From assembly GCF_006345805.1 (NCBI RefSeq), contig NC_043004.1, positions 14,322,001 through 14,386,000 on the forward strand: a stretch of 64,000 nt of DNA, read 5' to 3'. Of this stretch, positions 683-64,000 are shown one piece after another; position 1 is the first letter of the stretch; each line of letters begins with the position of its first letter. The position numbers and the translations under genes are program-made. A model generated the notes under the pieces. That model ran no database searches. It was given only the letters and a program-made list of their open reading frames with translations, and was not told where the DNA came from. This DNA is from Octopus sinensis (Eukaryota).

Positions 683-731
<49 letters not shown>

Positions 732-751
732 CATTATTATTATTATTATTT
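594..751. repeat. Compound microsatellite (CTT)n then (ATT)n
   Basis: Seen directly in the sequence. Confidence 0.98.
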
Positions 752-756
752 ATTTA

Positions 757-1095
757 TTTTTCATATACGCTCAGCAGACTGTTGGAAAAGAAAAACTCCT
801 AACATGTGACTACAACAAATGTTTAAGGATAGTTCCCGATGCATCTATAGAGACAGGGGTACCTTTTGCCCGCACTTTCCCCAGTCTCTGTAACTCAATG
901 GCCAGGTCCTGTTACATTGCTATTTTCCCTATACTTCTCATATTGATTCTCATCATTTACGACTATAACGTCAATTATCCGGCACTTTCTATTCTCTTTA
1001 TCCATTACTACTAAATTAGGTTTTCTAGCTTCTTTTACTATGTCCGTTTAAATGTTAAAGTCCCACAGCATCTTATATTTCTTACGTTTTCATAC
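757..1095 (-). mobile_element. R4/Dong-type 3' fragment (endonuclease domain plus short 3' UTR), family B
   Basis: Minus strand reads KMLWDFNI*TDIVKEARKPNLVVMDKENRKCRIIDV...DLAIELQRL; 3' end abuts the (AAT)n tract. Confidence 0.85.
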
Positions 1096-1104
1096 TTAAG
1101 CAAA

Positions 1105-1250
1105 GTCGACATCAAATTCCACCGAGGTCGACTTTGCATTTTATTCTTTCAAGTTCGATAAAATGAGTACAGTTTCAGTACTGGGGTCGATGTATTAGAC
1201 TCCCTCCCCCAAATTTCAGGCCTTGTGCCTCTAGTAGAAATTATTATTAT
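1105..1250 (+). mobile_element. SINE family A, 5'-truncated copy with (ATT)n tail
   Basis: tcaaattccaccgaggtcgactttgc...ctggggtcgatgta...agtagaaattattattat matches the body and tail of the full copies at 2986 and 37989. Confidence 0.85.
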
Positions 1251-1415
1251 TTCACTTTACTACATGTGTTTTTGGAGCTTCTGGAATTTGCATGCGTAGC
1301 GGGCTTGCTAACTACAGCCTACGGTACTATGCTATTCGTTCTTTTCAGCTATCTAATACTTTTCTGATTATTCAGGCCGTGCCAAGGAGGCAAACGTTTT
1401 GTAATGTCAAGCAGA
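1251..1415 (-). mobile_element. R4/Dong-type extreme 3' fragment, family A
   Basis: Minus strand ends CLLGTA*IIRKVLDS*; its 3' UTR resembles that of the copy at 1950-2925; it is joined tail-to-tail to the SINE (ATT)n tail. Confidence 0.8.
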
Positions 1416-1784
1416 GAAGTTGAATTGTTGAGAATCTTTTTAACTTAGCTCTTATATCTATTGTTTGAATATATATATATATATATATATATAAATTAAA
1501 ATATAAAATTAAAATAAGGGTGAACATTTGAATAATAATTTGATTAATATGAATTTAAAACCAGTGGTGTAGCATATAAGACCATAGCGGATCTTCTTCT
1601 AGCAAAATAGATGTCCACTGTTAATGGTTCATCCCTGTTATATAATAGTTTCACTTTAATAGGTTCAGTATTAAAGTGAAAGTATCTGACATTACTATAG
1701 AGAGATGTTTTTGTTTCACTTTTAACAAGTAATACTGAAACAGTGGAGAAGATATGATATTGCTGTGGGCTCGCCCTAGGTCAT

Positions 1785-1942
1785 AAGTTAAAACTTTTTC
1801 CCCATGACACTACATGGACCCTACGTAGGCATGTGTAACATTTGAATGAAATTGGTTGTGTAGTTCTCAAGTTTTAGGGATTCACACACACACACACAGA
1901 GACAGACAGACAGACACACATTCTCAGTTTTATATACATAGT
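1785..1942 (+). mobile_element. DINE-1/HINE-like (Helitron-related) non-autonomous 3' end
   Basis: gaaattggttgtgtagttctcaagttt...(CA)n/(CAGA)n...cattctcagttttatatacatag has the DINE-like 3' layout; related ends occur at 18630, 19085 and 50300. Confidence 0.4.
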
Positions 1943-1949
1943 TTATTAT

Positions 1950-2924
1950 TATTTTCTCTTTATCACAGTTTATTCTGAAGATCTTGGAGTCTTGCATACC
2001 TAGCGGCCTTGTTAACTGCAGCCCACGGTACCATGCTATTCATTCTTTCGAGCTAACTAATGCTGACTAATAATTCCCTGATTATTCTGGCCTTACCAAG
2101 GAGGCAAACCTTTCGTAACAGTTCTACTGGGTACTTTATTCCAGTTTCTTTTATATATTTCTTGATACCTTCTACTATTGTTTACAAGGACCCAACAATA
2201 ATTAACACCATCTTCACCGTCTTCATTTTCCATAGTCGGGCTATTTCGTACTTTTCGCCTTCCTTCTTGACTATTCGTGGGTCAAATGGACATGCAACAA
2301 GAAGTATATAGCTAGCATATGTGGTCCATCTTGTCCACCACCACTAGGTCTGGTCTGTTATGCTTTAGCACCTAATCTGTTTGGATTGGGAAATCCCAGA
2401 ATATTTAGCTAGTCTCCAATTCAGTTTCTCTCTACGCTTTGTTCTCATACCATGTCTTGCCCCTCTCTAGCCGCCACTTTTCGCACAGTTTCCAATCTAT
2501 CCTTTTCGCTACCTGGTCGTGTCGCCACGACTTTTAGTAGTTTGGGGAAAGTCTGGGACATTTGTTAGTGATATGTGCAATTGCTTCATCCACTCTAATG
2601 CAGATGCGGCACAGCGGAGACACTTGCACATTCCTAAGGTTGACCCTCCAGTTTGTAGCCAAGGCTTCGTCTTGCGCTGCCAGTATAGTGCTCTCGGTTT
2701 CGTCTTTTAGTGTTCATTTCATTAACCAATCTCGCCTATTTTTCTCAGTAACTTTTGTTCTGGCTACATAGAATTGATTGTGTAGTCCCTTCTTGTGTAA
2801 TTCTTCTTCATCTCCTTTTTGCACTTCTTCCTTTGTTTCCCCTTTTTTCTCGGCTCTCAATACTCTCTCGTTCTTAACTGTCACTAGCAAGGTTTCCTTA
2901 CTTTGGTACTTTGAGCCAATTATC

Positions 2925-2925
<1 letters not shown>
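1950..2925 (-). mobile_element. R4/Dong-type 5'-truncated copy, family A (degraded)
   Basis: Minus strand reads ETESTILAAQDEALATNW...CRICIRVDEAIAHITNKC...RHDQVAKRIDWKLC (CCHC knuckle), then the endonuclease domain; flanked by (AAT)n and (GAT)n on the sense strand. Confidence 0.88.
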
Positions 2926-2967
<42 letters not shown>

Positions 2968-2985
2968 TATTAACTTTATTATTAA

Positions 2986-3197
2986 GGCGGCGAGCTAGCA
3001 GAATCGTTAGTGCTCCGGACGAAATGCTTAGGGGGTTTTCGTCCGTCGCTACCTTCTGAGTTCAAATACTGCCGAGGTGGACTTTACCTTTCATCTTTTC
3101 AGGGTGGTTAAAATAAGTACCATTTGAACGCTGGTGTCGATGTAATCGTCTCATCCTCTTCCCTACAATAGCTCCACCTGTGGAAAATTTTGAAACC
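2986..3197 (+). mobile_element. tRNA-derived SINE family A
   Basis: ggcggcgagctagcagaatcg (A box), gagttcaaatac (B box), conserved body, followed by a (CAT)/(ATT)n tract to about 3297. Confidence 0.9.
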
Positions 3198-3226
3198 ATT
3201 ATTATCATCATCATCATCATAATCAC

Positions 3227-3298
<72 letters not shown>

Positions 3299-4614
3299 GG
3301 GTTTTATACACTCTGTATGCATACAAAATATTTATTGTCCTGTTAAACAGTTAGCAGTTTGCTATATTTGAATTTTGGGAAAAAGAGTTTTTGCGGAAAG
3401 TACAATACTTTGATTTTGTTTCTAGGTCACTGGGTCTAAAATTTTGAAATATTATCAAAGGAATTTATATTTGAAAATACGAACACAGTAGCGATTATGG
3501 TGGCAGCATATACGAGGGATAAAAGGAAGGTGATTCATATAGTGGGTAGGAATTCGCATTAAAAATATTATCTCTGCTATAAACATGAGTAAATATAACA
3601 CGAACCACCATCGATGATGACTTGTAAAACCGCCACTACCACCACCTTAACGCATGCTTCCGCCGCTATAGCCGCCGGGATCAACACCACCGCCACCATC
3701 AGCATCAGCCCCGCCATCACTACCACCACGACTGTAGCATGAAGAAACAGCAGAAAAATCATGAAAATTTAAGAAGACATTCACAAAACAACTGAAAGAG
3801 AATTATTAGTAGTAGTACGAGCAGCGACAGCAATACCAGGCCCACCACTACCACTAACATCACCTCTATCATAAACATCGCAAATGGCGAGATTACTATA
3901 TCGTGTAGTAAAGACACGAACAGAAATAGTTGCGCTAAACTCTCAGCACAAATGCTCACCATTCTCTTTGCAGTACTGTAAACATTTCTAATGTTTGTTT
4001 TGGAAACAAATTAGTGTCAATGTTTCTAACATTTTCATATGAATTTAATATCATAAGTTCTTTGGCATTTTACCAAAACTATTGTAAAACTCAAATTTTA
4101 TTGTGACAAATTTCTTCAGAAATTTAATTGAGAAATAAACTTGAAGGTCAACATGTGTTTTCTGAAGTGACAATAACGATATTTAACATAAGCGGAAAAT
4201 AGTTTGTTTACAAAACATAGAAAGAACGATTATATCAACCTCAATATTTGTCTGGTATTACTTTAACGACTTGCGTCTCATAAAACGTAGAGTGAACATT
4301 TGAATTGGGAACATAAAGTAACGTAACTAAGGGTCGGTTAAAATATTGTCACTCGACCAACTATTTCTATCAACTCAGGAATAATATCCAGAATAGGCAC
4401 TTTCACTTTCGTATGTTTCATGTTCTTTCACTCCCTCTATCTCTCTTTTTCCATCCCTTTTCCCGTCTCTCCCTCTTTCTCTAGCTCTCTGTTTTCCACA
4501 CACACACACACACACACACACCATGCATGCCATTCATTCCATTTTCCCATATAATCCGTCCATTATTCAATGTGTCCAACACTATCAACCCAACCACCAC
4601 TATAATTATCATTC

Positions 4615-4897
4615 ATATAAGCAAAACAGATTAGATCTGGAAAAGAAAAATTGCAAAATCGAGTCAAGAGCCCTTCTAAGTGTCCTAGCTGTCCCTAATA
4701 ACACTGTTATCTGGAGCTGTAGTAAACTGTACTAAACTAGGTTTAGTGCCTATTTCCTCTATCCTTCTGTTCAAATATTTAGGGATAGTTCCTAATACAT
4801 CTATAACTAATATGATACATTCTACCTGCATTTCCCATAATCTCTGTAGTTCAATGGATAGGCTTTGGTACTTCGCTATTTTTTCTATACCTCTCCA
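4615..4897 (-). mobile_element. R4/Dong-type 3' fragment, family B
   Basis: Minus strand reads EKIAKYQSLSIELQRLWEMQVECIILVIDVLGTIPK...VLLGTARTLRRALDS; the 3' UTR motif ttttcttttcca...tatatgaa is shared with 757-1095. Confidence 0.85.
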
Positions 4898-4923
4898 TTA
4901 TTATTATTATTATTATTATTATT

Positions 4924-6140
4924 TTTTTTTTCTTCTTCTTTCAAATTAGCTTCCATTTCTTGCCGAGTGTCTTCCCGACTCCTAGGGCAAAGAAACTCAT
5001 AGTATACATTGGTAGGCCATGAAACTAAACTCAATAGTTCGTTCATTTAAAAAAAAAAAATTAAGTTAAATTAAAATACATGGGTAGTAATAGTTCTCAC
5101 ATCGACAATGCTCTTCTCAATACGTGTGATGTACCAGTTAAGACAATCTTTTGCACCTCTTGCAGGGATGGTAAGCCAGGGATAATTCTCATATAATTTT
5201 CGGTTCCCTTCTTGATCATTCCTAGTGCTCCTACGATCACTGGTATTGTAACCGCCTTGAGATGCCACATTTTCTCAATTTCAATGAGCAGGTCTTTATA
5301 TTTACTGAGCTTGTCAAACTCTTTCGCTGAGATATTATGATCACATGGGATGCTCATGTCAATCAATAAGCAAACTTTATTGTTTTGGTCTTTCACAACA
5401 ATATCTGGTTTATTGGCCTTGATGGTTCGGTCTATATGTACTGGAAAGTCCCACAGAATGGTTACATTTTCTCCTTCAGTTACAGCCTCAGGGTGGTGAT
5501 TATACCACTTGTCGGCAGTTTTGATATTGTAATGCCGACTTATTAGCCAGTGTAGATATTGGCCAACTCTGTCATGTCTTAATTGATACTCCACTGGTGC
5601 TAAGACTTTACATCCAGAGATTAGGTGGTCCACTGTTTCAATCATGTCGTTGCAGAATCGGCATTTTGGGTCTGCTCCATTTTTCATCACATTGGCCTGG
5701 TAGTTCCGAGTTAATAGGCTTTGATCTTGAGCAGCCACGATGAAACCTTCACTCTCTGCTTTTAGCCCTGAGCTCCGTAGCCACTGATGGGTTTCCTTCT
5801 GGTCAACATCAGCTTGTTTGCTGCGAGCCACATATTTGCCGTGCAGAGGTTTCTCCTTCCACCCATCAGCCAATTGCTCGTGCGCTTTTTTCGTTGCCAT
5901 TATTTTCACCTTCTCTGCAACAATATTTGCCGTACTTCCCTCGGGTTGTTCAGTTTGGGTATCCTGCATGAGATCAATAGCAAATTTTTTGCTTTCCTTT
6001 ATGATAGAATGAAGCTTCTTTCGTCTCTCGTGATTTTCCACGAGCTTTACCATCCAGTCATTCGTTATTTCGAGATATTTGGCCAGTCCAATTGTGGTTG
6101 TTTTGTAAGCTAGTTCAAATTGGATCAGGCCTCGACCTCT
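4924..6140 (-). mobile_element. R4/Dong-type 5'-truncated copy, family C, with an uninterrupted reading frame
   Basis: (ATT)n on both sides on the + strand (4898-4923, 6141-6157); open frame to its natural stop; about 170-bp 3' UTR. Confidence 0.95.
5097..6140 (-). CDS. C-terminal 347 codons of a non-LTR ORF: RT thumb, CCHC zinc knuckle, restriction-like endonuclease
   Basis: The frame is open for 29 codons upstream of the tracked Met (RGRGLIQFELAYK...). Contains AAQDQSL, CRFC...HLISGC, RHDRVG, WDFPV, KPDIVV...LIDMSIP...KLSKY and VIVGALG. Confidence 0.92.
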   Translation of the reverse strand, partial: RGRGLIQFELAYKTTTIGLAKYLEITNDWMVKLVENHERRKKLHSIIKESKKFAIDLMQDTQTEQPEGSTANIVAEKVKIMATKKAHEQLADGWKEKPLHGKYVARSKQADVDQKETHQWLRSSGLKAESEGFIVAAQDQSLLTRNYQANVMKNGADPKCRFCNDMIETVDHLISGCKVLAPVEYQLRHDRVGQYLHWLISRHYNIKTADKWYNHHPEAVTEGENVTILWDFPVHIDRTIKANKPDIVVKDQNNKVCLLIDMSIPCDHNISAKEFDKLSKYKDLLIEIEKMWHLKAVTIPVIVGALGMIKKGTENYMRIIPGLPSLQEVQKIVLTGTSHVLRRALSM

Positions 6141-6157
6141 TTATTATTATTATTATT

Positions 6158-6671
6158 GGGTGAGAGAGCAGAGCATGCCATCAAAGTGACACTGGGGTAA
6201 AATATGTGAAGTCCAGTATACCCATCATGACTGCCCGTCTGATAAAGGTACATCAGGCACATGCATCAAAACTATATGTGCGCGACATGGTGATCTCATA
6301 TCGAGATAACCAGCACATGACCTTGCAGGTGGGGCCCAGTTAGAATTTTCTTCTTGTCGATTAACCATACCACTCAAAAGGTCCCTGTTTCCAGAGGTGA
6401 ATTATTCAAACCACAAAGAATACCTCTCAACACATGGCCATGATGCTCCCCCACTACTTCTGCTTGTGATCAGAGATGCACATATCGTCAGCCACTAAGG
6501 GACATGCTCAAATGGTTAAGGTAAAACAACTGACAAGCAAATCTGTGGTATTGAGCAGAATATTTGCTGTAGCCCATCTTTTATACGAAGACAAAACAAT
6601 GTACATGATAACATTTCCAATTAGTTAAGTTCTGAAGCAAAGAGAGATAATGCCTGGTATTGCATGAAGAC

Positions 6672-6673
<2 letters not shown>
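6158..6673 (-). mobile_element. Copy of the ~556-bp non-coding (AAT)n-targeted element, with a ~39-bp internal deletion
   Basis: Reverse complement of 60159-60714 and 60804-61359 with the same two termini; (ATT)n on both sides. Confidence 0.9.
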
Positions 6674-6735
<62 letters not shown>

Positions 6736-6745
6736 GTTATTGTTA

Positions 6746-6800
<55 letters not shown>
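6674..6800. repeat. (ATT)n microsatellite
   Basis: Seen directly in the sequence. Confidence 0.98.
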
Positions 6801-15599: not shown

Positions 15600-16002
15600 T
15601 GTATTCTTTTCTACACTAGGAACAAGACCGGAAATTTTGCTGGAGGGGGCCTAGTCGATTAGATCGACCCCAGTGCGTGACTGGTACTTAATTTATCAAC
15701 CCCGAAAGGATGAAAGGTAAAGTCGACCTCTGCGGAATTTGAACTCAGAACGTAAAGACACACGAAATACCTATTTCTTTCCTACCCACAAGGGACTAAA
15801 CACAGAAAGGACAAACAAGGACAGACAAACGGATTAAGTCGATTATATCGACCCCAGTGCGTAACTGGTACTTAATTTATCGACCACGAAAGGATGAAAG
15901 GCAAAGTCGACTTCGGCGGAATTTGAACTCAAAACGTAACGGCAGACGAAATACGGCTACGCATTTCGCCCGGCGTGCTAACGTTTCTGCCAGCTCGCCG
16001 CC
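15600..16002 (-). mobile_element. Dimeric SINE family A
   Basis: A full head monomer (ggcggcgagctggcagaaacg..., 16002 to about 15770) is fused to a second 5'-truncated monomer; the B box and body occur twice. Confidence 0.88.
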
Positions 16003-16416
16003 TTACAGTTAGAACACATTAAAACAATCTATAGTAACACTTCGCCATATGGCGGGTCAACAATCGCAGTTCACCTATCGCGTTTGCCTTTGTGGTGTTA
16101 TGTAAAATAAATGTATAGAATTTATAGAAATAAATACACTGTATAGTACTGTTTCTACTTCGCAGATTTTCACCTATCGCAGGAGGTGGGTTGGAACGTA
16201 ACACCCGCAATAATCGAGGAATTACTGCATTGAATTATGAAATGCTTAAAAGGCATGGATGCTGCAAATTCCGTTTCTGTCGTCATATTCGAAATAATAC
16301 AGCAGAAAACGCAGCTGGGAATAAATCAGAACATAAACCATCAACAAAATTGCTTCATACATTATAAACCAGTTGAATTGGGAATAAACCTCTGAAATTC
16401 ACGAACCCAAACTAAT

Positions 16417-21659: not shown

Positions 21660-23686
<2,027 letters not shown>

Positions 23687-36415: not shown

Positions 36416-36470
36416 GTTGTTGTTGTTGTTTTTGTTGCTGCTGTTGTTGTTGTTGTTGTTTTTGTTGTGC

Positions 36471-36504
<34 letters not shown>

Positions 36505-36510
36505 ATTATT

Positions 36511-37216
36511 ATATGTTTGACTTTTGCTTTGTATTTGTACAAGTTGACTCCATGTCTCACCCAGAAATCTCAAGAGATAACAATTTAAATTTTTAAGTTA
36601 GTGTTATACCTAGGGTGTCAAATACTTGGTTTTTTACGTAGTATTGTTCTAGAAAATGCTTAAGAAAAACATAAGAAAATTATGAGTTTGTTTTAAACTT
36701 GAGATTACATAGACAGTATTTACGTAGGATATGGGTAGTTTCCAGGAGCACTATCTTTTGAGTTTCTGCCATTTTGGGGTTTCCTGGTATATGAGATATG
36801 TAGGAATCTGCCCCTTTTGCTATCATTTCAAGGGCACCTATGACAACAGGTTTTGTTTTAATCTTGAGCTTTCACATTTTGCTAATTTCTATTTCAAGAT
36901 CTATATATTTTCTCAGTTTTAGATGGATACATGTATGACAGATACATTTATGTCGATTGGGACAGTCATATCAATGAGGGGGCATGCTTTTTGTCTGAAG
37001 TCTTCCACTATAATGTCTATCTTTCCGTCACTTTGAATGGTGAGGTGATAATGTTCAAGCACTTGAGGTGGTTTGTATTCTCATCAGTTTTTATCATGGG
37101 GCAGGTCCAGGATTTTGCGAATTACCCAGTGAACATATAGTGCTCCTCTACCATGCCTGTTAAGATACTCTGCAGGTACAAGGAGACTACACATGGAGAC
37201 AATGCTTTGATTTTGT
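36511..37216 (-). mobile_element. R4/Dong-type 3' fragment, family D
   Basis: SMCSLLVPAEYLNRHGR..YVHW followed by the endonuclease domain; 3' end caaagcaaaagtcaaacatat matches 62038-62823; flanked by (ATT)/(GTT)n. Confidence 0.9.
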
Positions 37217-37234
37217 ATTATTATTATTATTATT

Positions 37235-37895
37235 GTTGCCTTTGCATAGCTTCTAACGCTGTAGGTGTATTACAGTGTCAGCTGTTCACTACCAGTGAAC
37301 TAAGAAAACACCCCTTATTCTTTGAGCACCTTCCGGAGTATTCGAGCAGTTCCAAGCAGTGCTGTTTTCTGCAAGTGTTCCACCCTTATTGCAACCCCTA
37401 TTTGTCCCACGTGCTTCTCAAAAATTTTTCTCACTGTTCCCATGTCTCCGACAATTATTGGTAATATTGCTACCTTTTTCATCGACCATAACTGCTTAAC
37501 TTCCCAAGCTAACTTGTCATATTTCTCGACTGTTCTTTCTTCCTTGTCGCATACCTGTTGTCAGCTGGGCTTGCTATGTCTATGATCCAGCATAGTTTGT
37601 TTTCTTTCTCAATTAAGACTATGTCCGGCTTCCTATTCTCAATCTCGTGGTCACACTAAATAATAAAATCCCATAGGATCGTTGTATTTCTATTTTCGAT
37701 AATGCCTTCAGGCTTGTGGTCGTACCAATTTTTTGCTCTGTCAAGTTCATACATGTTGCAAAGTATCCAATGGACAAGCCTGGCTATATTGTCGTGGCGT
37801 CTCTTATATTCCTTCTGGGCTATTGGCGTACATTGGCTGGTAATATGCCATACGATTTCACCGTTTTCTCCACAGATTCTGCACTTATCATTTTC
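37235..37895 (-). mobile_element. R4/Dong-type 3' fragment, family E
   Basis: DKCRICGENGEIVWHITSQC...YKRRHDNIAR, endonuclease domain, KTALLGTARILRKVLKE*; (ATT)n on both sides. Confidence 0.9.
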
Positions 37896-37975
<80 letters not shown>

Positions 37976-37988
37976 TTATTATTATAAA

Positions 37989-38537
37989 GGCTGCGAGCTG
38001 GCAGAATTGTTGGCACGCCGGGTGAAATGCTTAGCGTTGTATCGTCTGCCGCTACCTTCTGAGTTCAAATTCCGCCGAGGCCTACTTTGCCTCTCATCCT
38101 TTCGGGGTCGATAAATTAAGTACTAGTTGAACACTGGGATCGATGTATTCGACTAGCCGCTCCCCCACATTTCAGACCTTTTGCCTATAGCAGAAAGGAT
38201 TATTATTATTTTTGTTGTTGTAGTTGTTATTATTGTTGTTGTTGTTATTTGTGTTATTGTTGTTGTTGTTTTTATTATTATTATCATTATAAAGGCATCG
38301 AGTGGGTAGAATCGTTAGCACGTTGGACGAAATGCTTGGCGATATTTCACCCGTCGCTACGTTCTCAGTTCAAATTCCGCGGAGGTTGACTTTACCTTTC
38401 ATCCTTTCAGAGTCGTTTGAATAAGGACAAGTTACGAACTGGTGTTGATGCAATTGACTTCCCCCCCACCCACCAAATTTCAGGCCATGTGAATATAGTA
38501 GAAAGGATTATTATTATTATTATTGTTATTATTATTT
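37989..38537 (+). mobile_element. Two tandem SINE family A copies (37989-38200 and 38294-38507) with (ATT)/(GTT)n tails
   Basis: A and B boxes, shared body, ...gaaaggattattatt tails. Confidence 0.9.
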
Positions 38538-40349: not shown

Positions 40350-41230
40350 TTCATTTCAAATTATGGCTTATGCCCAGAATTCAGCAGGAGCGGACAAGTC
40401 GATTACATCGACCACAGTCTTCAACTACTACTTATTTTATTGATCCTGACAGGACAAAACGAAAAATCGACCTCAGCGGAATTTGAACTCAGAATGTGAA
40501 GACGGACGAAATGCTGCTAAGCATTTTCCCAGGGAGCTCGCAAATCTACCGGTTCCCCGCCTTAATATGAAGTAATACTGGTTTAGATTAAGAATTAATG
40601 TTGGTTTCAAATTATGGCTGAAGGCCAACAGTTTTGTCGGAGAGAGCAAATCGATTACATCAACGCCAGTGCTCCACTGATACTTACTTTATCGACCCCG
40701 AAATGATGAAAGGCAAAGTTAACCTCGGACGAAATGACGCTAAGAATTTTGCCAAAAAATACCGCCAGCTCGCCGCCTTAAATTACAAATTAATATTAAA
40801 ATAAGAAAAGCCTTTCGTTGCGAGTGAACTATCAGCAACCATCCAATGTAAGCGTATAGAAAGTTTACGATATATATTTACTTCACAAAGAAATAGTTAA
40901 TGATGATAACACAACGGGTAGAATAAGGCAAGTGGATATGATAAATATGCATAACATAGTCATCTATATTAAAGTAGAATCATTATGATTAATATAAACG
41001 AAATTGCCACAACACAACAATATATTGGCTTCAAATTTTGGCATGAGGCCAGAAATTTTGGGGAAGGGAATAATTCAACTCCACTGTTCGACAGGTATTT
41101 ATTTTTATCAACCCCAAAAGAAGGAAAGGTGAACTCGAAATCAGAGGAATTTGAACTCAGAACTTAATGACGGAAGAAATACCGACTAGCATTATGCCAG
41201 GTGTGCTGACAATTCTGCCTGCTCTCCCTC
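40350..41230 (-). mobile_element. Three diverged SINE family A copies (about 40350-40563, 40600-40778, 41020-41230)
   Basis: Reverse-complement B box ggaatttgaactcagaa, cagctcgccgcc head and atcgacccc body motifs. Confidence 0.8.
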
Positions 41231-43544: not shown

Positions 43545-43740
43545 CGGCGAGCTGGCAGAATTGACTGCAGGCTAGAAAAAAAAACTTAGCGGCATTTCGT
43601 TTACCATAACATTTTGAGTTCAAATTCTGCCGAGCGGGTCTTTGTTTTTCATCCATCAGGAGTCAATAAAATAAGTTCCAGTTTATCACTGGGGTTGATG
43701 TAATCGGATTACGCGCTCACCTGAAATTGCTGAGGTACAT
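43545..43740 (+). mobile_element. SINE family A
   Basis: ggcggcgagctggcagaatt...gagttcaaattctgccgag...ctggggttgatgtaatc. Confidence 0.85.
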
Positions 43741-53855: not shown

Positions 53856-55840
53856 ATATTTTCGTCGCTTTGAAACCGCAACCTTTTCACCGACAAAACT
53901 TGGTGAAAATGTTTCGGGGAACAGGTCACGGTTTCAAAGCGACGAAAATATTTTGACTGTTATGAAATTAAAATGTTGAAGCGAAACTAACGGTTTTTGT
54001 GTGTTCTTGAATGGCTTACAAATATCTTACACGCTGAAATTGCCTTCATTTGCTACTTCCTTTCTTTCTTATTCTTATTTTAGTTTTATTTTCAGATACT
54101 CTCCCATGGTTTTCTATCATTCAGTCAAGTCATTCTATTCAGTTCATGATGCAGTAAATTATGTAGAAGAAAATGAGTCTCCTAGTGATGAAAACTTTAT
54201 TGATATTTTTGAAATACCTTCATCGGTAAATGAACTAACAGATGAAGAAAACTTTGATGATGTAATTTTTTATGATGAGAACAGTGATCCGACGTTTATC
54301 TTGCTGTATGTGCCAGGAGGTGTTGAGCTTCATCGGTATGATAATGAATAAGAACTAAACCAAAAAGAAAAAGAAAGAAAACCTCAGATTTCTCTTGGAC
54401 AAAGATTGAGCTTAATTTTTCAAAATTTGCATCACCAACTATTGATTGAGCAGATGATAGAATGAAATGAATGAATGATAAAGTATTTGGCAAGAGCCCA
54501 GTTGAGATATTTGAACTTTTCTTTGACGAGGATTTACTAAGTGAAATTTGCAGAGAATCTGTCACTTATTCCACACAGGAAAATATATATGATTTTAGTC
54601 TGTCAACAAACTGTCTGAGAAAATTCATTGGAATCCTAATTTTTTCCTCAGGATACCACAGACTTCCAAGAGAACGGCATTATTGGAGCGTGTCTAAAGA
54701 CCTTGAAACTCCGATTATTCCAAAAACAATGCCAAGAGACAGTTCTAAGCACCAAAAGGTTTCTTCATTTTGTTGACAATGAAAATGCAGAAAACTACTA
54801 AGATGATAAAGGATTCAAAATTAGATCGCCAGCAGATGCTCTTAATCAGAAGTTCACGCAGTTTGGAATATTCTCTGAGAGACTGTCAGTAGATGAACAG
54901 ATAGTAAGATACTATGGAAGAAGATCTCTAAAACAACTTATAAGAGGTAAGCCCATAAGATGCAGTTTCAAATAGTATGTGCTTTTTTGTGCCCCTAGCG
55001 GCTATTGCTTTCGAGTGGATTTATATCAAGGAAAGCAAAAAGTCTTATTTCCAATACCAAGTATGTTGACAGTCTAGGTTCAAGAATGGTTTTATCAGTG
55101 ACCAATTACCTAGAGAACCCCAATGATCATGAAATTTATGTTGATAACGTTTTTCCCAAGTTATAACCTCTTTCTACAAATGAAATCCTTAGGAATCAGA
55201 ATATCGGATACAGTACGTTCAAGCACAGCGTCCAGATGTCCGCTGAAGGTTGACAAATCCCTGAAAAAGGAAAATCGTGGATCCTATGAGTGCAAGTTTG
55301 AAAAAATGAAAGAAATCTGTTTTTCTTTAAATGGCATGACGGCAGGGTTTTCACAATTGCAAGCAATCATCAGTCTGCCACCCCTGTTGGAAATGCTAAA
55401 AGATGGTCAACCAGCCACAGAAAAGAAATATTTGTTCCTTGACAATTTCTCATGTCCGAGTATAACAAATATATAGGAGGTGAGAACAACTTAGATTGAT
55501 TGGCTTATCGAAAGGTATCGCATCTCTGTTATATCTAAGAACTGGAACTTTACAAATTTCCTTGATGCTAGGATGGTTAATTCCTGGACTGTACACTGTT
55601 TTGCAAATGGAAATGCTTTGACATTACTAAATTTCAAGAGATAAGTTACTCAAAAGTTATCCTCAGATTCTGATCCCCAAAATTCGGGACTGCCAAAGGT
55701 ATTTTATTTTAAAGTAATAGCAGAAATTAGATTCTATACTACCGGACATATTCTTGATAGAACAGAGCGAGAGAAACAACGAAAATTTGCCTTTTGCTAC
55801 GAAAATGTTCCAAAACAATGTGTAAAATGTGATACGCTCT
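53856..55840 (+). mobile_element. piggyBac-like transposase remnant with an upstream 29-bp inverted repeat
   Basis: SPVEIFELFFD, LRKFIGILI.SGYH.LP.ERHYW, LSVDEQIV, GKPIR, IYVDN, NKYIGG...D, and C-terminal FCY...CVKCD. Confidence 0.88.
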
Positions 55841-58500: not shown

Positions 58501-60066
58501 ATAGTATTGGTCTTTTATTTTTTAACCTCCGAGTCATATAAACACCGACCGAGGTAAGTGTTGTCTTTGTAAATTACATTACTTAACACTATTTCAGGTC
58601 TAACTGCAAACATCAAATTATAGGATGCGTCACTGGTTGCAATAAGCAATACTTTATTTAGAACATTAGCTCTACTATAGCGATAGATTACAGAAAAAGT
58701 TTGGTGACTGACGAAACAAATTCATAAAAACTTTTGGATGAAAATCTTGGCATCACACTTTATTATTATTTTTTTTTTTTTGCAATTAGAATAACATTAA
58801 TTCAAGTGTGAGTGTGATGTTTATTATGCCTTTAAGAAAGTTTTATATCGAAAATTAATTTTGGAAGTACAAGCGCAAGAGGTAATCAGTCAGTTACCTT
58901 AGATCTCTGTACACTTAACTTTAGATAACGTTGCTCCTGATCAACATATAACAAATATGCTTCTAGATTATGGCTAAAAATTATTAAATTTGTTTTTTTG
59001 ATTAAGAAGAGATTAAATGTAAATCAAATTCAACAAAATTTGAAGTAAACAGATAAGCTTTCACTTGATTCCTTCATTTTTTAAATCAAGTCTAATCTTA
59101 ATTAGAAAATAATAATTTTCAAATGGAGTTGGGAGGCTTATGAAGTGTGAGTTATTTTGGTAATTGTATATTTCGATTCGGATTCCTATTTTTAGATATT
59201 TCTTTCTACTTATGACGTTAATACTTTTGAAAAGAGATATGAGCGTCAAAATAACTCAATTAAAATATAGGAAGAGACGTTAGTTATATAGCTCAACTGA
59301 CGTAGCAGGCCAAATCTGCCATCTGGTTTAAATTTCTTGTTAGATCCTATTAGTGTCGGAAGAACTGTTTCACAAAAAAACATTTTACTATCTGTATGCG
59401 AAGTTATAACATGTCAGGTTAGATTTATGCGTACTTTTGATAAAAATCTATTCACAAATATCACTGATTTCTGTCCGGTTCTCAAACTTATTGAAGTAGC
59501 AGAGCAATTTATTGAAACTTTATGATTCAGAAACACCAAATAACCGAACAGTCAATATTCTTAGCAACTATTTGTATATCATTTATAGCTTCATCAATAA
59601 AATTATATTTGCTGACAGAGTTTTTTCGTCGTTTAATGTAAAACATTATGTTTTGCTTGGTTGCATTCCTCCGATGGCATTGCCCTGTAATTTTGACAGA
59701 GCATTGAACACTCCTAGGCAAACTATTTTCTATGAAATAAATTGCCATAGTAATGATAATAATAATAATAATGATAATAATGATGATGATGATACGTCAG
59801 ACGTATTGGGAAGAGCATTGTCGCTGTGAATTTTCTTTCTTTTTGCCCCTTATTTTCTTAGTTTACTTCTATATTTTATAGTTTTTCCTTTTCGCTCTGT
59901 CTTTCTTCCCTTGTTTTTTCTATCACGTGACTTTGTAAATGAACAATCTGGTGAGATTGTGTTAATGACCTACAAATATATACAAGGCATTTCTCTGCCC
60001 TTGGTATCGGGGGATGCGCTCAGTGGGATGGGGAAGCAAAATTAAGGGGAGATGATAATGAAAGTG

Positions 60067-60097
<31 letters not shown>

Positions 60098-60117
60098 TGA
60101 TAATAATAATAATAATG

Positions 60118-60152
<35 letters not shown>

Positions 60153-60158
60153 AATAAT

Positions 60159-60714
60159 ATGCCCTGATGCAGTACCAGGCAGTGGCTCTCATGACTTCTG
60201 ATCTTAACTGATTGGAAGTGTTATCATGTACATTGTTTTGTCTTGGTATAAAAGATGGGCTACAGCAAATATTCTGCTCAATACCACAGATTTGCTTGTC
60301 AGTTGTTTAACCGTAACCAGTTGGGCATGTTCCTTAGTGGCTGGCGATATGTGCATCTCTGATCACGAGCAGAAGTAGTGGGGGAGCATCATAGCCATGT
60401 GTTGAGAGGGATTCTTTGGGGTTTGAATAATTCACCTCTGGAAACATGGGTGTTTCGTTCAACACCCTTGAACAACCCTTATTCAGGGATCTTTCGAGTG
60501 GGATGGGTTACTCGACCTGAGGAAAATTCTAACTGGGCCCCACCTGCAAGGTCATGTGCTGTTTATCTTGATATAAGATCACCATGTCGCGCACATATGG
60601 TTGTGATGCATATGTCTGGTGTACCCTTATCAGACGGGTAGTCATGATGGGTATACTGGGCTTCGTATATTTTACCTCAGTGTCACTTTGATGGCATGCA
60701 CTGCTCTCTCACTC
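60159..60714 (+). mobile_element. 556-bp non-coding (AAT)n-targeted element, copy 1
   Basis: atgccctgatgcagtaccaggc...ctgctctctcactc between (AAT)n tracts. Confidence 0.92.
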
Positions 60715-60754
<40 letters not shown>

Positions 60755-60803
60755 TAATAATAATAATAATAATAATAAAATAATAATAAAATAATAATAA
60801 TAA

Positions 60804-61359
60804 ATGCCCTGATGCAGTACCAGGCAGTGGCTCTCATGGCTTCTCATCTTAACTGATTGGAAGTGTTATCATGTACATTGTTTTGTCTTGGTATAAAAGA
60901 TGGGCTACAGCAAATATTCTGCTCAATACCACATATTTGCTTGTCAGTTGTTTGACCTTAACCAGTTGAAAATGTCCCTTAGTGGCTGACAATATGTGCA
61001 TCTCTGATCACGAGTGGAAGTAGTGGGGGAGCATCATAGCCATATGTTGAGAGGGATTCTATGGAGTTTGAATAATTCACCTCTGGAAACATAGGTGTTT
61101 CATTCAACATCCTTAAACAACCCTTATTTAAGGACCTTTTGAGCGGGATGGGTTACTCGACCAGAAGAAAATTTTAACTGGGCCCCACCTGCAAGTTCTT
61201 GTGCTGTTTATCTTCATATGAGATCACCATGTCGCGCACATATGGTTGTGATGCATGTGTCTGGCGTACCCTTATCAGACGGGTAGTCATGATGGTTATA
61301 CTGGGCTTCGTATATTTTACCCCAGTGTCACTTTGATGGCATGGACTGCTCTCTCACTC
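60804..61359 (+). mobile_element. 556-bp non-coding (AAT)n-targeted element, copy 2
   Basis: Same termini and length as copy 1; separated from it by 89 bp of (AAT)n. Confidence 0.92.
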
Positions 61360-61409
<50 letters not shown>

Positions 61410-61452
61410 AAGTGATAATAATATATAATAGTAATTATAATAACAATAATAA

Positions 61453-61523
<71 letters not shown>

Positions 61524-61560
61524 GTAATGATAATAATAATAATAATAATAATAATAATTA

Positions 61561-61944
61561 ACGGAACCAAACAAAAATATGAGAGACCAATACAGTCAAA
61601 TAATTGATATCGTCATACCAAATGACATGAATGTTGTGAGTAATGAGGTTACAAAAATTATCAAGTACCCCGTATTGAAAGTGGAAATTGCAAGACTGTA
61701 TGGAATGCGAGAGGATAATGGAAAAGTGATACCCATCGTGAATGGAGTGCTGTGCTCAATTGCATTGAAACTTCAAGACTTCTTAAGGCAACTGGAAATC
61801 CCCTGCAAGACTGAGGTCTTGCAAAAAGCAACCTTATTGAGCACAGCGCACGTCTTAAGGTAAGTATTATCTGTGTGAGGTCCTCGTCACTTGACAGATG
61901 ACTAAAGACTCCAGGGCATTTTTACCTACACTGCGTTACGAAGG
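61561..61944 (+). mobile_element. R4/Dong-type 3' fragment, family F
   Basis: IIDIVIPND.NV...EVTKIIKY..LKVEIARLY...VIPIVNGVL...LQKATLLSTAHVLR; short 3' UTR; (AAT)n on both sides. Confidence 0.88.
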
Positions 61945-61968
61945 AATAATAATAATGATGATGATGAT

Positions 61969-62020
<52 letters not shown>

Positions 62021-62037
62021 TAATAATAATAATAATA

Positions 62038-62823
62038 AGCAGCTCAAGATCAATGCTTACCAACAAGAAACTACCAGGCCAACATATTAAAGAACGGCAG
62101 TAGCCCAACATGTCGTGTGTGTCAACAAAAAAATGAAACCATTGATCATGTTGTCTCCAAGTGCAGTCTTCTAGCGCCTACAGGGTATCTCAACAGGCAT
62201 GATAGAGCTGCACAATATATTCACTGGGTAATTTGCAAAAACCTGGATTTGCCCCTTGAAAAAAAACTGGTGGGAACACAAGCCACCTCCAGTGATTGAG
62301 AACTTCACCATTCAAACTGAGAGAAAGATAGATGCAAATAGGCCAGACATCATATTGAAAAACTTCAGACAAAGAACATGCCTCCTCATTGATATGACTG
62401 TCCCAATCGATATAAACGTATCTGTCAAGACCTACCAAAAACTGAGAAAATATAATGATCTTGAAATAGAAATCAGCAAAATGTGGAACCTGAAAACTAA
62501 AACAATACCTGTAGTCATAGGTGCCCTGGGAATGATAGCAAAAGGGCTGATTGCTACCTAACTCAGATACCAGGAAACCCAAAATGGCAGAAATTCAAAA
62601 GATAGTGCTCATATCCTACGCAAAATACTCTCTATGTAATCCCAAGGTTTAAAACAAACTTTTTTTATGTATTAGACATCCACTAGTACAACACCAAAAA
62701 AACCCCCAAATATATGGCACACTAGGCATAACAACAACGTGAACTTCCAACCTGTTGTCTCTTGAGGTTTCTGGGTGAGCCTTGGAGCCAACTTGTACAA
62801 ATATAAAGCAAAAGTCAAACATA
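62038..62823 (+). mobile_element. R4/Dong-type 3' fragment, family D
   Basis: AAQDQCL.TRNYQA, CRVC...HVVSKC, RHDRAA, RPDIILK, LIDMTVP, IPVVIGALG; about 180-bp 3' UTR; (AAT)n on both sides. Confidence 0.93.
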
Positions 62824-62846
62824 TAATAATAATAATAATAATAATA

Positions 62847-62896
<50 letters not shown>

Positions 62897-62943
62897 GTAA
62901 TAATAATAATGATGATGATTAATAATAATAATATCAATAATAA

Positions 62944-64000
62944 TTGGAGCATTGGAGCCCTGCTAGGAAAAACCACATCCTACGCAAGACACTATCAATT
63001 CATTAATACTACCTATACAAAACATTCCACAAACACGACACACTCTGTACATCAATTATCCAGTGAAATAAACATCTACCAGCAAACCGGATAACAAAGA
63101 AATACCTAAGTGAATTCCTAATACAACAAATCCCAGAATTAGACGTATTGGAAACAAGTACAGAAAAATCTAAGCGTATGAAAACCCGTGCTAAATCTGC
63201 TGCCTTGGATATTCTTACTGATAAATGGCAAGAAAAACCTCTCAAACACCCAAAGAGCGCTAATAATGCCAATGTTGACACAGCCCTCACCCATCGATGG
63301 TTAGTGCCTTCTGGCTTAAAATCAGAGACAGAAGGGTTTATCATAGCCACCCAAGATCAATGCCTACTTACAACAAGCTACCAGGCCAACATTAAAGAAC
63401 GGCAGTAGCCCAACATTTCGTGTATGTCAACAACAAAATGAAACCATTGATCATGGTATCTCCCTGTGCAGCTTTCTTGCGCCGACAGAGTATTCCAACA
63501 GGCATGATAGTGCAGCGCACTATATTCAGTGGGCAATTTGCAAAGACTTAGACCTACCTCATGGTAAAAACCTGCGGGAACAAAAACCACCTTCAGTGCT
63601 TAAAAATAATCACCTCTCACACCTTTGAAACTTTACTTCTCAAACTGACAGATAGATGCATATAGACTAGACATTATATTGAAGAATTTCAGACAAACAT
63701 CATATATCCTCATCGATATGACTGTTCCTATCGACATAAGTCTGTCAACAGTTAAATTTATGAAAAGTGAGCAAGTGTAAAGATCTTGAAATAGAATTTG
63801 GCAAAATGTGAGACCTCAACACGAAAACAATACATTTTGTGACAGGTGTCCGAAAAATGATATCGAAAGAAGCTGATTGTTACCTATCTCAGATATCAGG
63901 AAATCCAAACTTGGAAGAAATTCCAAAAACTAGTCCTCGTGGGAATTTCTTATATCCTACGAAAAATATCGTCTGCGTAATCTCCAAATCCTCTCAATCT
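62944..64000 (+). mobile_element. R4/Dong-type fragment, family D, more diverged, running to the window end
   Basis: DKWQEKPLKHP...THRWL..SGLKSETEGFIIATQDQCL, then degraded knuckle and endonuclease domain. Confidence 0.9.

What the first reader, a model, noticed from the sequence alone, without database searches (positions are those of the whole stretch)
60159..61359. Discrete 556-bp non-coding element that targets (AAT)n with R4/Dong polarity: candidate non-autonomous partner
Seen: two copies of exactly 556 bp (60159-60714, 60804-61359) and a third inverted copy at 6158-6673. All three share the same 5' start (atgccctgatgcagtacc-like) and 3' end (ctctctcactc), and all lie in (AAT)n with the same strand polarity as the 11 R4/Dong fragments. 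I see no Pol III A/B box, no TIRs and no conserved ORF. The 3' end can form hairpins present in all three copies (cccttatca-gac-gggta-gtc-a-tgatggg; actggg...cccagt). Established: R4/Dong-clade elements include microsatellite-specific (TAA) inserters, and R2 has short internally deleted non-autonomous derivatives. Inference: random 5' truncation would not give a constant 5' end, so this looks like a unit mobilised in trans by a TAA-targeting retrotransposon, with its 5' end set by an internal promoter or RNA self-processing.
Basis: partly seen in the sequence, partly recalled or inferred. Interest (0 to 1): 0.8.

Follow-up and report, generated by a model that had tools for sequence, protein, structure and literature searches.

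The report
Octopus non-coding retroposon in (AAT)n repeats
A 556-bp non-coding repeat of octopus genomes always sits, whole and in one orientation, inside AAT microsatellites next to broken Dong/R4-type jumping genes, so it is most likely a small parasite copied by their enzymes, an interesting but not revolutionary addition to known non-autonomous retroposons.

Summary
The window holds two copies of exactly 556 bp (60159-60714 and 60804-61359, 93.3% identical). A third, inverted copy (6158-6673) carries a 39+1-bp internal deletion. All three have the same termini and lie in (AAT)n in one polarity. The window is octopus DNA. I found a fourth complete 556-bp copy in Octopus bimaculoides, in an intron with unique flanks, with the same 5' start (ATGCCC) and the same 3' end (CTCTCTCACTC + (AAT)n). 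At least three or four further copies show up as pieces of O. bimaculoides gene models. Divergence among the four copies is star-like. There is no conserved ORF, no Dong coding remnant, no terminal inverted repeat and no Pol III A/B box, and internal T4 runs are present. No Rfam ribozyme matched. The sense RNA is predicted to fold unusually well. About ten co-oriented Dong/R4-type fragments in the window are truncated at different 5' points. The best reading is a non-autonomous retroposon that enters (AAT)n by target-primed reverse transcription, probably using Dong/R4 proteins. The link to a partner is circumstantial: no Dong 3' end available here resembles the element's 3' end. How the 5' end is made is unknown, and the self-cleavage idea has no support. 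Interest is moderate.

The parts
60159..60714 (+). Element copy c1, 556 bp, complete; the least diverged copy (12 private substitutions)
60804..61359 (+). Element copy c2, 556 bp, complete; 93.3% identical to c1
6158..6673 (-). Element copy c3, 516 bp; same termini, with an internal 39-bp deletion (element positions about 288-326) plus a 1-bp gap
60069..60158 (+). (AAT)n tract 5' of c1; it is the tail of the Dong 3'UTR fragment that lies upstream
60715..60803 (+). (AAT)n between c1 and c2: the tail of c1 and the target of c2, or the reverse order of events
61360..61558 (+). (AAT)n-rich tract 3' of c2; it contains 'aatgaaagtgat' at 61404-61415, the same 12-mer as the Dong 3' terminus at 60052-60068
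6674..6798 (-). (AAT)n tract 5' of c3
6143..6157 (-). Short (AAT)5 tract 3' of c3, followed directly by a 5'-truncated Dong copy
60636..60706 (+). Predicted 3'-terminal stem-loop domain of the element RNA, shown for c1 (alignment A2 columns 479-550).
60386..60609 (+). Long-range 17-bp helix (arms 60386-60402 and 60593-60609) with G.U pairs that work only on the sense strand
4924..6142 (-). 5'-truncated Dong/R4-type copy: 318-aa C-terminal ORF with CCHC and PD..D..K motifs, a 173-nt 3'UTR and an (AAT)9 tail at 4897-4923
59869..60068 (+). Dong 3'UTR-only fragment, similar to the 3'UTR at 4924-5123, ending in 'aatgaaagtgat'
61559..61944 (+). 5'-truncated Dong-type fragment followed by (AAT)n at 61945-62036
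62037..62824 (+). 5'-truncated Dong-type fragment followed by (AAT)n at 62825-62932
62933..63943 (+). Dong-type fragment that runs towards the end of the window
36416..37896 (-). Two 5'-truncated Dong-type fragments (36416-37216 and 37235-37896), each with an (AAT)n tail

Best explanation
The element is a family of short (556 bp), ORF-less, non-autonomous retroposons of octopus genomes. A defined, highly structured RNA that ends in (AAU)n is copied by target-primed reverse transcription into (AAT)n/(TAA)n microsatellites. The orientation is fixed by the tail and target repeat. The most likely source of the reverse transcriptase and restriction-like endonuclease is the co-resident, (TAA)n-specific Dong/R4-clade LINEs. 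Because the RNA is short, it is usually copied to its 5' end, which gives a constant 5' terminus. Each insertion carries or regenerates an (AAT)n tail that serves as the next target, and this builds head-to-tail, non-nested arrays of elements and Dong fragments. Shown here: discreteness, constant termini in four copies from two assemblies, the (AAT)n context and polarity, the absence of coding capacity, of terminal inverted repeats and of a Pol III promoter, and star-like divergence. Inferred: RNA-mediated copying, Dong as the partner, and the 3' stem-loop plus (AAU)n tail as the recognition signal. Unknown: how the 5' end of the RNA is made. Pol II initiation or processing of a read-through transcript are the options, and Pol III is unlikely.
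For: Four copies share the same 5' end (ATGCCC, plus or minus 1 nt of repeat phase) and the same 3' end in a fixed repeat phase (CAC(T/C)C|AAT). There are three in the window and one in O. bimaculoides CM046622.1 (L002:70546-71101), inside a PP2A-B55 intron with unique flanks. Further distinct copies appear in O. bimaculoides gene models P0001, P0002, P0123 and P0125, and P0125 includes the same 3' junction with the repeat. The phylogeny is star-like: private substitutions number 12, 19, 30 and 42, and only 3 sites are shared by c1 and c2. All element copies are complete at the 5' end, whereas about 9-10 Dong fragments in the same arrays start at different protein positions (1, 37, 68, 107, 130, 144, 199, 215, 246). 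By my own arithmetic, Fisher's exact test gives p of about 0.001. AAT/ATT tracts cover 1.8% of the window and 0.4% of L002. All window copies are co-oriented with adjacent Dong fragments. There is no conserved ORF and no Pfam hit, no terminal inverted repeat and no A/B box, and T4 runs lie at positions 78 and 512. The sense RNA folds to -186.4 kcal/mol (z = -2.8, 0 of 100 shuffles as good), the antisense to -147.3 (z = -1.9). The consensus fold keeps 95.9% of cells paired, with 4 double changes against 1.7 in shuffles. Literature: Dong inserts in (TAA)n (PMC3774820); Dong-R4 is the second largest LINE group in O. vulgaris (92.7 Mb, 51 families, 5 of them recently active; PMC13282606 and its supplement); non-autonomous elements that share their partner's target are known for R2 (SIDEs) and Tx1 (SINEU) (PMC3774820, PMC4494074).
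Against: No sequence or structural similarity links the element's 3' (or 5') 200 nt to any of the 12 (AAT)n-adjacent 3' ends in the window or to L001. LINEs with stringent 3'-end recognition would need such similarity. Only four full copies could be examined, and two of them are adjacent. The O. bimaculoides copy has only 9 nt of AAT upstream, so strict targeting of long (AAT)n tracts is not proven. Polarity would be the same for any partner that primes on an (AAU)n tail. No empty site or polymorphic insertion was seen, so mobility itself is inferred. No clear target-site duplication was found.
Confidence: 0.6

Rival explanations
1. It is a non-autonomous retroposon, but its partner is another LINE whose RNA also ends in (AAU)n, such as an RTE-type or I-type element. 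On this view the downstream (AAT)n is simply the element's own tail, and the upstream AAT reflects insertion into A/T-rich sites or into older tails.
For: Copy c4 has only 9 nt of AAT upstream and a 33-nt tail downstream. RTE is the largest LINE group in O. vulgaris, and an octopus RTE has a 3'UTR that is mostly microsatellite (PMC9115989). RTE is the clade best known for ORF-less bipartite derivatives (PMC5786205). I elements end in (TAA)n (PMC3747384). No Dong 3' end here resembles the element.
Against: Three of four copies have 81-123 nt of (AAT)n upstream. All window copies sit in arrays made only of Dong-type fragments. No RTE-like or I-like coding fragment was seen next to any (AAT)n tract in the window. 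No flanking target-site duplication of the 10-15 bp type is visible.
Confidence: 0.15
2. It is the 3' part of a long LINE with an unusually long 3'UTR. The 5' truncations pile up at one point because the cDNA joins the upstream (AAT)n by microhomology at an internal AAT/ATG site.
For: The element starts with (A)ATG, which overlaps the repeat unit, so joining by microhomology is conceivable. Only four copies were examined.
Against: There is no RT or endonuclease coding remnant in 556 bp, although Dong 3'UTRs here are only about 170-190 nt. No copy extends further 5'. The flanks of c4 are unique. Dong fragments in the same tracts are truncated at many different points.
Confidence: 0.07
3. The copies spread at the DNA level, by unequal crossing-over or gene conversion between AAT microsatellites or as a satellite-like tandem unit, not through RNA.
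For: c1 and c2 are tandem with a 645-bp period. The 12-mer 'aatgaaagtgat' flanks the pair on both sides at 60052 and 61404.
Against: Divergence is star-like, with only 3 substitutions shared by c1 and c2. c3 lies 54 kb away in inverted orientation next to a different Dong fragment. c4 lies in unique intronic DNA of another assembly. The boundaries are exact, with nothing but microsatellite shared outside them.
Confidence: 0.05
4. It is a non-autonomous DNA transposon that targets microsatellites, like the plant SaTar MULEs, or a PIF/Harbinger MITE with a TAA duplication, or a Helitron.
For: Non-nested arrays of elements separated by microsatellite are the hallmark of SaTar elements (PMC5907723). 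PIF/Harbinger elements duplicate TAA/TTA (own knowledge).
Against: No terminal inverted repeats. The termini are AT/TG...ACTC, not the TC...CTRR of Helitrons. The strict single orientation relative to the asymmetric repeat, the fixed 3' phase against a 5' phase that varies by 1 nt, and the strand-specific RNA fold all point to an RNA intermediate.
Confidence: 0.04

Closest known systems
R2 SIDEs (short internally deleted elements of Drosophila; Eickbush & Eickbush 2012, as summarised in PMC3774820)
   Same: Both are ORF-less, a few hundred bp long and dependent on a restriction-like-endonuclease LINE. Both insert at exactly the partner's target in the partner's orientation and have a constant 5' end.
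   Different: SIDEs are demonstrably made of the R2 5' ribozyme plus the R2 3'UTR. Here no ribozyme was found and no similarity to any available Dong UTR. The target is a microsatellite, not 28S rDNA.
Dong of Bombyx mori and R4 (R4 clade of non-LTR retrotransposons)
   Same: (TAA)n target and fixed polarity. The window's neighbouring fragments carry the CCHC + PD..D..K C-terminal domain of this group.
   Different: Dong is a LINE several kb long with an RT ORF and an HDV-like ribozyme that cleaves exactly at the (UAA)n/element junction (PMC3774820). The 556-bp element has no ORF and no detectable ribozyme.
SINEU families mobilised by Tx1-Mar LINEs in crocodilians (PMC4494074)
   Same: A non-autonomous retroposon whose shared target preference with a target-specific LINE is the main argument for mobilisation in trans. 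Transcription possibly depends on flanking sequence.
   Different: SINEU has a U1/U2 snRNA-derived head, and its partner carries an APE-type endonuclease. Here no small-RNA head is recognisable.
Bipartite ORF-less non-autonomous LINEs of RTE, Ingi, Vingi and R2 (Kojima 2018, PMC5786205)
   Same: Size class, lack of ORF, microsatellite tail, probable Pol II or read-through transcription.
   Different: That review lists only those four clades. A Dong/R4 derivative would be a fifth, but derivation from a Dong 5'UTR and 3'UTR is untested here.
SaTar elements (microsatellite-targeted non-autonomous MULEs of guayule and rice, PMC5907723)
   Same: They build non-nested linear arrays of elements separated by microsatellite.
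   Different: They are DNA transposons with terminal inverted repeats. The octopus element has none and shows strand polarity.

Membership tests
Canonical SINE (Pol III-transcribed) | Head derived from tRNA, 5S, 7SL or snRNA with an internal Pol III promoter (A/B boxes) | tested here: not met
   ARAGORN found 0 tRNAs. Rfam at gathering and at E<=10 gave no small-RNA match in 60000-61500. A regular-expression scan found no A or B box.
Canonical SINE (Pol III-transcribed) | No internal Pol III terminator (T4 or longer) before the 3' end | tested here: not met
   TTTT at element positions 78 and 512. The first is conserved in c1-c3.
Canonical SINE (Pol III-transcribed) | 3' tail shared with a partner LINE | tested here: inconclusive
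   No similarity to the 12 (AAT)n-adjacent 3' ends in the window or to L001. Only a small fraction of the 51 Dong-R4 families of octopus could be sampled.
SIDE-like or bipartite non-autonomous LINE derivative (of Dong/R4) | No ORF; length of a few hundred bp | tested here: met
   The longest ORFs are 87-92 aa, are not conserved between copies and have no Pfam match.
SIDE-like or bipartite non-autonomous LINE derivative (of Dong/R4) | Same target site and orientation as the autonomous partner | tested here: met
   All 4 copies lie in or next to (AAT)n in the polarity of about 10 Dong fragments.
SIDE-like or bipartite non-autonomous LINE derivative (of Dong/R4) | 5' segment derived from the partner's 5'UTR (a ribozyme in R2 and Dong) | not testable with these tools
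   No full-length octopus Dong 5' end was available; every Dong copy in the window, L001 and L002 is 5'-truncated or absent.
SIDE-like or bipartite non-autonomous LINE derivative (of Dong/R4) | 3' segment derived from the partner's 3'UTR | tested here: inconclusive
   Not met for the Dong families present in the window; other families could not be examined.
5'-truncated Dong/R4 LINE copy | Remnant of the RT or CCHC/REL-endonuclease ORF upstream of a 3'UTR of about 170-190 nt; variable 5' ends | tested here: not met
   TBLASTN with the 318-aa Dong C-terminus gave no hit inside the element. The 5' end is identical in 4 of 4 copies.
HDV-like (or other known) self-cleaving ribozyme at the 5' end | Nested double-pseudoknot fold starting at the cleavage site, or a match to a ribozyme covariance model | tested here: not met
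   No Rfam ribozyme family at E<=10. The descriptor search found no P1/P3/P2 set conserved across the four copies. R2-type ribozymes with very long J1/2 loops could escape both searches.
MITE or other TIR DNA transposon (including SaTar-like MULEs and PIF/Harbinger) | Terminal inverted repeats | tested here: not met
   None of the 7 inverted repeats found involves the termini.
Helitron | 5'-TC ... CTRR-3' termini with a subterminal 3' hairpin, inserted between A and T | tested here: not met
   The termini are ATGCCC ... CACTC on one strand and GAGTGA ... GGGCAT on the other.
Non-LTR retrozyme | Tandem units that carry hammerhead ribozymes | tested here: not met
   No hammerhead match at E<=10 in the c1-c2 tandem.

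The most novel reading that the evidence does not exclude
The element is the first ORF-less non-autonomous parasite of the R4/Dong clade, and the first aimed at a (TAA)n microsatellite. That would make R4/Dong a fifth LINE clade able to spawn such derivatives. Its exact 5' end would be cut out of read-through (UAA)n-containing transcripts by a self-cleaving RNA that none of the current ribozyme models recognises. The extensive strand-specific fold, in which the 5' end pairs with positions 456-476, would be part of that device.
Probability: 0.15. Interest if true: 0.65.

Novelty: new member of a known kind. Interest (0 to 1): 0.4.

Why it matters
If it is confirmed genome-wide, this family would show that microsatellite-specific Dong/R4 LINEs, about 3% of the O. 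vulgaris genome, support trans-mobilised parasites just as R2, RTE and Tx1 do. It would help explain how AAT microsatellites in octopus grow into kilobase-long head-to-tail arrays of repeats. It would also move one family out of the very large 'Unknown' or 'unclassified SINE' share of cephalopod repeat libraries. An element with no resemblance to its partner's 3'UTR would suggest that Dong recognises little more than the (UAA)n tail, which bears on how restriction-like-endonuclease LINEs choose their templates. It is also a practical caution for annotation, because pieces of the element, with poly-Asn from the AAT tail, are built into several O. bimaculoides gene models.

Tried and rejected
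- **More copies from public DNA.** Two exact-pattern scans of JGI metagenome contigs found nothing. Look-ups of P0001, P0002 and the window's Dong ORF found no contig. A six-frame 'polyprotein' query was the only route that worked: it led through P0124 to L002.
- **More octopus loci through Dong homologues.** Of 120 listed proteins only P0011 is close (93%), and its contig is a 2-kb metagenome fragment.
- **Known ribozymes and small RNAs.** Rfam gave nothing at gathering or at E<=10. A hand-written HDV-like descriptor gave many AU-rich chance hits and nothing conserved. The idea is rejected as unsupported, not disproven.
- **Partner through a shared 3' end.** Smith-Waterman alignment with shuffling, and a covariance model of the 3' 100 nt, both found only the element's own copies.
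- **Solved structures for the Dong C-terminus.** No sequence hit.
- **Published description.** Full-text searches and a search of the held O. vulgaris transcriptome supplement with element 20-24-mers found nothing. Repbase and Dfam are not available here, so prior curation cannot be excluded.
- **Other classes.** DNA transposon and Helitron (no terminal inverted repeats, wrong termini), recent tandem duplication (star phylogeny) and a plain Dong 3' truncation (no coding remnant) were considered and rejected.

Full report
**What is there.** The two adjacent copies are each exactly 556 bp (60159-60714 and 60804-61359) and 93.3% identical. The inverted copy at 6158-6673 is 90-92% identical and lacks 39+1 bp internally. 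All three begin (A)ATGCCC/ATGTCT and end CTCTCTCAC(T/C)C, and they sit between (AAT)n tracts read in the element's own orientation. AAT/ATT tracts make up only 1.8% of the window, so this placement is not chance.

**Organism and further copies.**
- The 87-aa ORF of copy 1 matches only two uncharacterised Octopus bimaculoides proteins.
- A six-frame query of the element found three more O. bimaculoides gene models that contain pieces of it.
- One of these (P0124, PP2A B55-alpha) led to 85.7 kb of O. bimaculoides chromosome CM046622.1, fetched as L002.
- L002 holds a fourth complete copy at 70546-71101, 556 bp and 87.8% identical to copy 1. It has the same 5' start (aataataat|ATGCCCTGATGCAG) and the same 3' end (CTCTCTCACTC|(AAT)11).
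- This copy lies in an otherwise unique intron. No homology extends beyond positions 1-556.
- P0001, P0002, P0123 and P0125 differ from all four copies (74-86% amino-acid identity). At least three or four more loci therefore exist, and P0125 reads through the same 3' junction into the repeat.
- The family is thus dispersed, discrete and present in at least one named octopus genome. The species of the window itself was not determined.

**What it is not.**
- It is not coding. Its ORFs differ between copies and have no Pfam match.
- It is not the 3' end of a Dong copy. The 318-aa Dong C-terminus finds nothing inside it, although Dong 3'UTRs here are only about 170-190 nt.
- It has no terminal inverted repeats and no Helitron termini.
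- It has no tRNA, 5S, 7SL or snRNA head and no A/B boxes.
- It contains T4 runs at positions 78 and 512, so Pol III transcription is unlikely.
- No Rfam ribozyme (HDV-like, hammerhead, twister and others) appears even at E<=10.
- A descriptor search for an HDV-like P1/P3/P2 arrangement starting at the junction found nothing conserved in the four copies.

**Surroundings.**
- TBLASTN maps nine Dong-type C-terminal fragments (CCHC motif followed by PD..D..K), and there is one 3'UTR-only fragment.
- They start at different points of the protein (1, 37, 68, 107, 130, 144, 199, 215, 246). Each ends in (AAT)n in its sense orientation.
- Together with the element copies they form two head-to-tail, non-nested arrays, at 685-6798 on the - strand and from 59758 to the end of the window on the + strand.
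- An independent copy of the 4924-6142 Dong (L001, from a metagenome) extends further 5' and also ends in (AAT)18.
- I did not place these fragments in a phylogeny. 'Dong/R4' rests on the C-terminal domain type, the (TAA)n context and the literature. That literature reports Dong-R4 as the second largest LINE group of O. vulgaris: 92.7 Mb, 51 families, 5 of them recently active.

**Evidence for an RNA-mediated, master-copy mode of spread.**
- Substitutions are almost all private (12, 19, 30 and 42 for c1-c4). Only 3 sites group c1 with c2. So even the adjacent pair is not a recent tandem duplication.
- The 3' junction has one fixed repeat phase in 4 of 4 copies. The 5' junction varies by one nucleotide of phase: TAAT|ATG in c1 and c4, TAA|ATG in c2 and c3. 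A precise 3' junction with a slightly variable 5' junction is the usual signature of target-primed reverse transcription (own knowledge).
- The sense strand is predicted to fold much better than the antisense strand: -186.4 kcal/mol (z = -2.8, 0 of 100 shuffles as good) against -147.3 (z = -1.9). The reason is that many helices contain G.U pairs.
- The consensus fold has 178 pairs with 95.9% of cells paired and 4 double changes against 1.7 in shuffles (8/500).
- With four related sequences, and a structure derived from those same sequences, this is only a hint.
- The fold pairs the 5' end (positions 6-23) with positions 456-476. It contains a 17-bp long-range helix and leaves a separate 72-nt 3' stem-loop domain just before the tail.

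**Partner.**
- The case for Dong is circumstantial: same target, same polarity, same arrays, and abundance in octopus.
- It is weakened by two points. Any RNA ending in (AAU)n would be primed on (ATT)n DNA in this polarity. And the element's ends resemble none of the 12 (AAT)n-adjacent 3' ends in the window, nor L001. This holds for local alignment with shuffling and for a covariance model of the 3' 100 nt searched without filters.
- Either the partner family is not represented here, or recognition needs little beyond the tail.
- An RTE-type or I-type partner remains possible.

**Comparison with what is known.**
- B. mori Dong carries an HDV-like ribozyme that cuts exactly at the (UAA)n/element junction. 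R2 SIDEs consist of the R2 ribozyme plus the R2 3'UTR (PMC3774820).
- SINEU and Tx1 share their targets (PMC4494074).
- Kojima (2018) lists only RTE, Ingi, Vingi and R2 as clades that produce ORF-less bipartite derivatives (PMC5786205).
- The octopus element behaves like these, but none of the sequence-level criteria for being a Dong derivative could be met or tested.
- I found no description of it in the searchable literature. Repbase and Dfam could not be consulted, and octopus repeat libraries contain over a thousand unnamed families.

**Verdict.**
- This is a real, discrete, dispersed, non-coding repeat family.
- It is most likely a non-autonomous retroposon specific for, or tailed with, (AAT)n, and probably dependent on Dong/R4 (confidence about 0.6).
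The ideas about how the 5' end is made are untested (promoter) or unsupported (self-cleavage).
- Interest is moderate at 0.4: it is a new member of a known kind. It would be more interesting if the Dong dependence, tail-only recognition or a new processing RNA were demonstrated.

Noticed in passing
window 37976-38210, 38280-38524, 1112-1251; further copies 15608-15771, 15837-16005, 40397-40526, 43587-43706: A SINE-like family of about 220 bp with a B-box-like motif (GAGTTCAAATTCCGC) and an (ATT)n 3' tail lies on the strand opposite to the Dong fragments and the 556-bp element. Read on the other strand, its tails are ready-made (AAT)n targets. Neither ARAGORN nor Rfam calls a tRNA in it.
   Followed up: partly
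window 60052-60068 and 61404-61415: The 12-mer 'aatgaaagtgat' is the 3' terminus of the Dong 3'UTR fragment upstream of c1. It recurs just after the tail of c2. This is either a long target-site duplication (about 100 bp) made when c2 or the c1-c2 pair inserted, or a second Dong copy truncated to its last few bases.
   Followed up: partly
L002:70967-71461 (O. bimaculoides CM046622.1): The NCBI gene model for PP2A B55-alpha (P0124) extends an exon upstream through the (AAT)n tail, translated as poly-Asn, into the last 135 nt of the element. Models P0123 (SVEP1-like) and P0125 (cGMP-dependent kinase) contain antisense pieces of other copies. These are either exonisation or annotation artefacts.
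   Followed up: partly
window 23324-23453 (+): A complete U4 spliceosomal snRNA gene (Rfam RF00015, 60 bits, E = 7e-11).
   Followed up: no
L001 (ENA ERZ22666216 metagenome contig, 1983 bp): A contig from a metagenome sample labelled as Italian is an octopus-type Dong copy. It is 94.6% identical to window 4897-6139 and ends in (AAT)18, which suggests octopus DNA in an environmental or sewage sample.
   Followed up: no
window 1252, about 1945-1960, 60052-60068 (3' termini of Dong fragments): Several Dong 3' ends share a loose terminal motif, (G/T)(A/T)AAAG(T/A)GA, directly before (AAT)n. The 556-bp element ends differently (CTCTCTCACTC).
   Followed up: no
window 685-6798 (-) and 59758-64000 (+): Two kilobase-scale head-to-tail, non-nested arrays of Dong fragments and element copies are separated only by (AAT)n. 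This architecture recalls the microsatellite-targeted SaTar arrays of plants, but here it is built from retroposons.
   Followed up: partly
window 54001-55476 (+): A run of ORFs of 100-117 aa may belong to a degraded DNA transposon. They were not examined.
   Followed up: no
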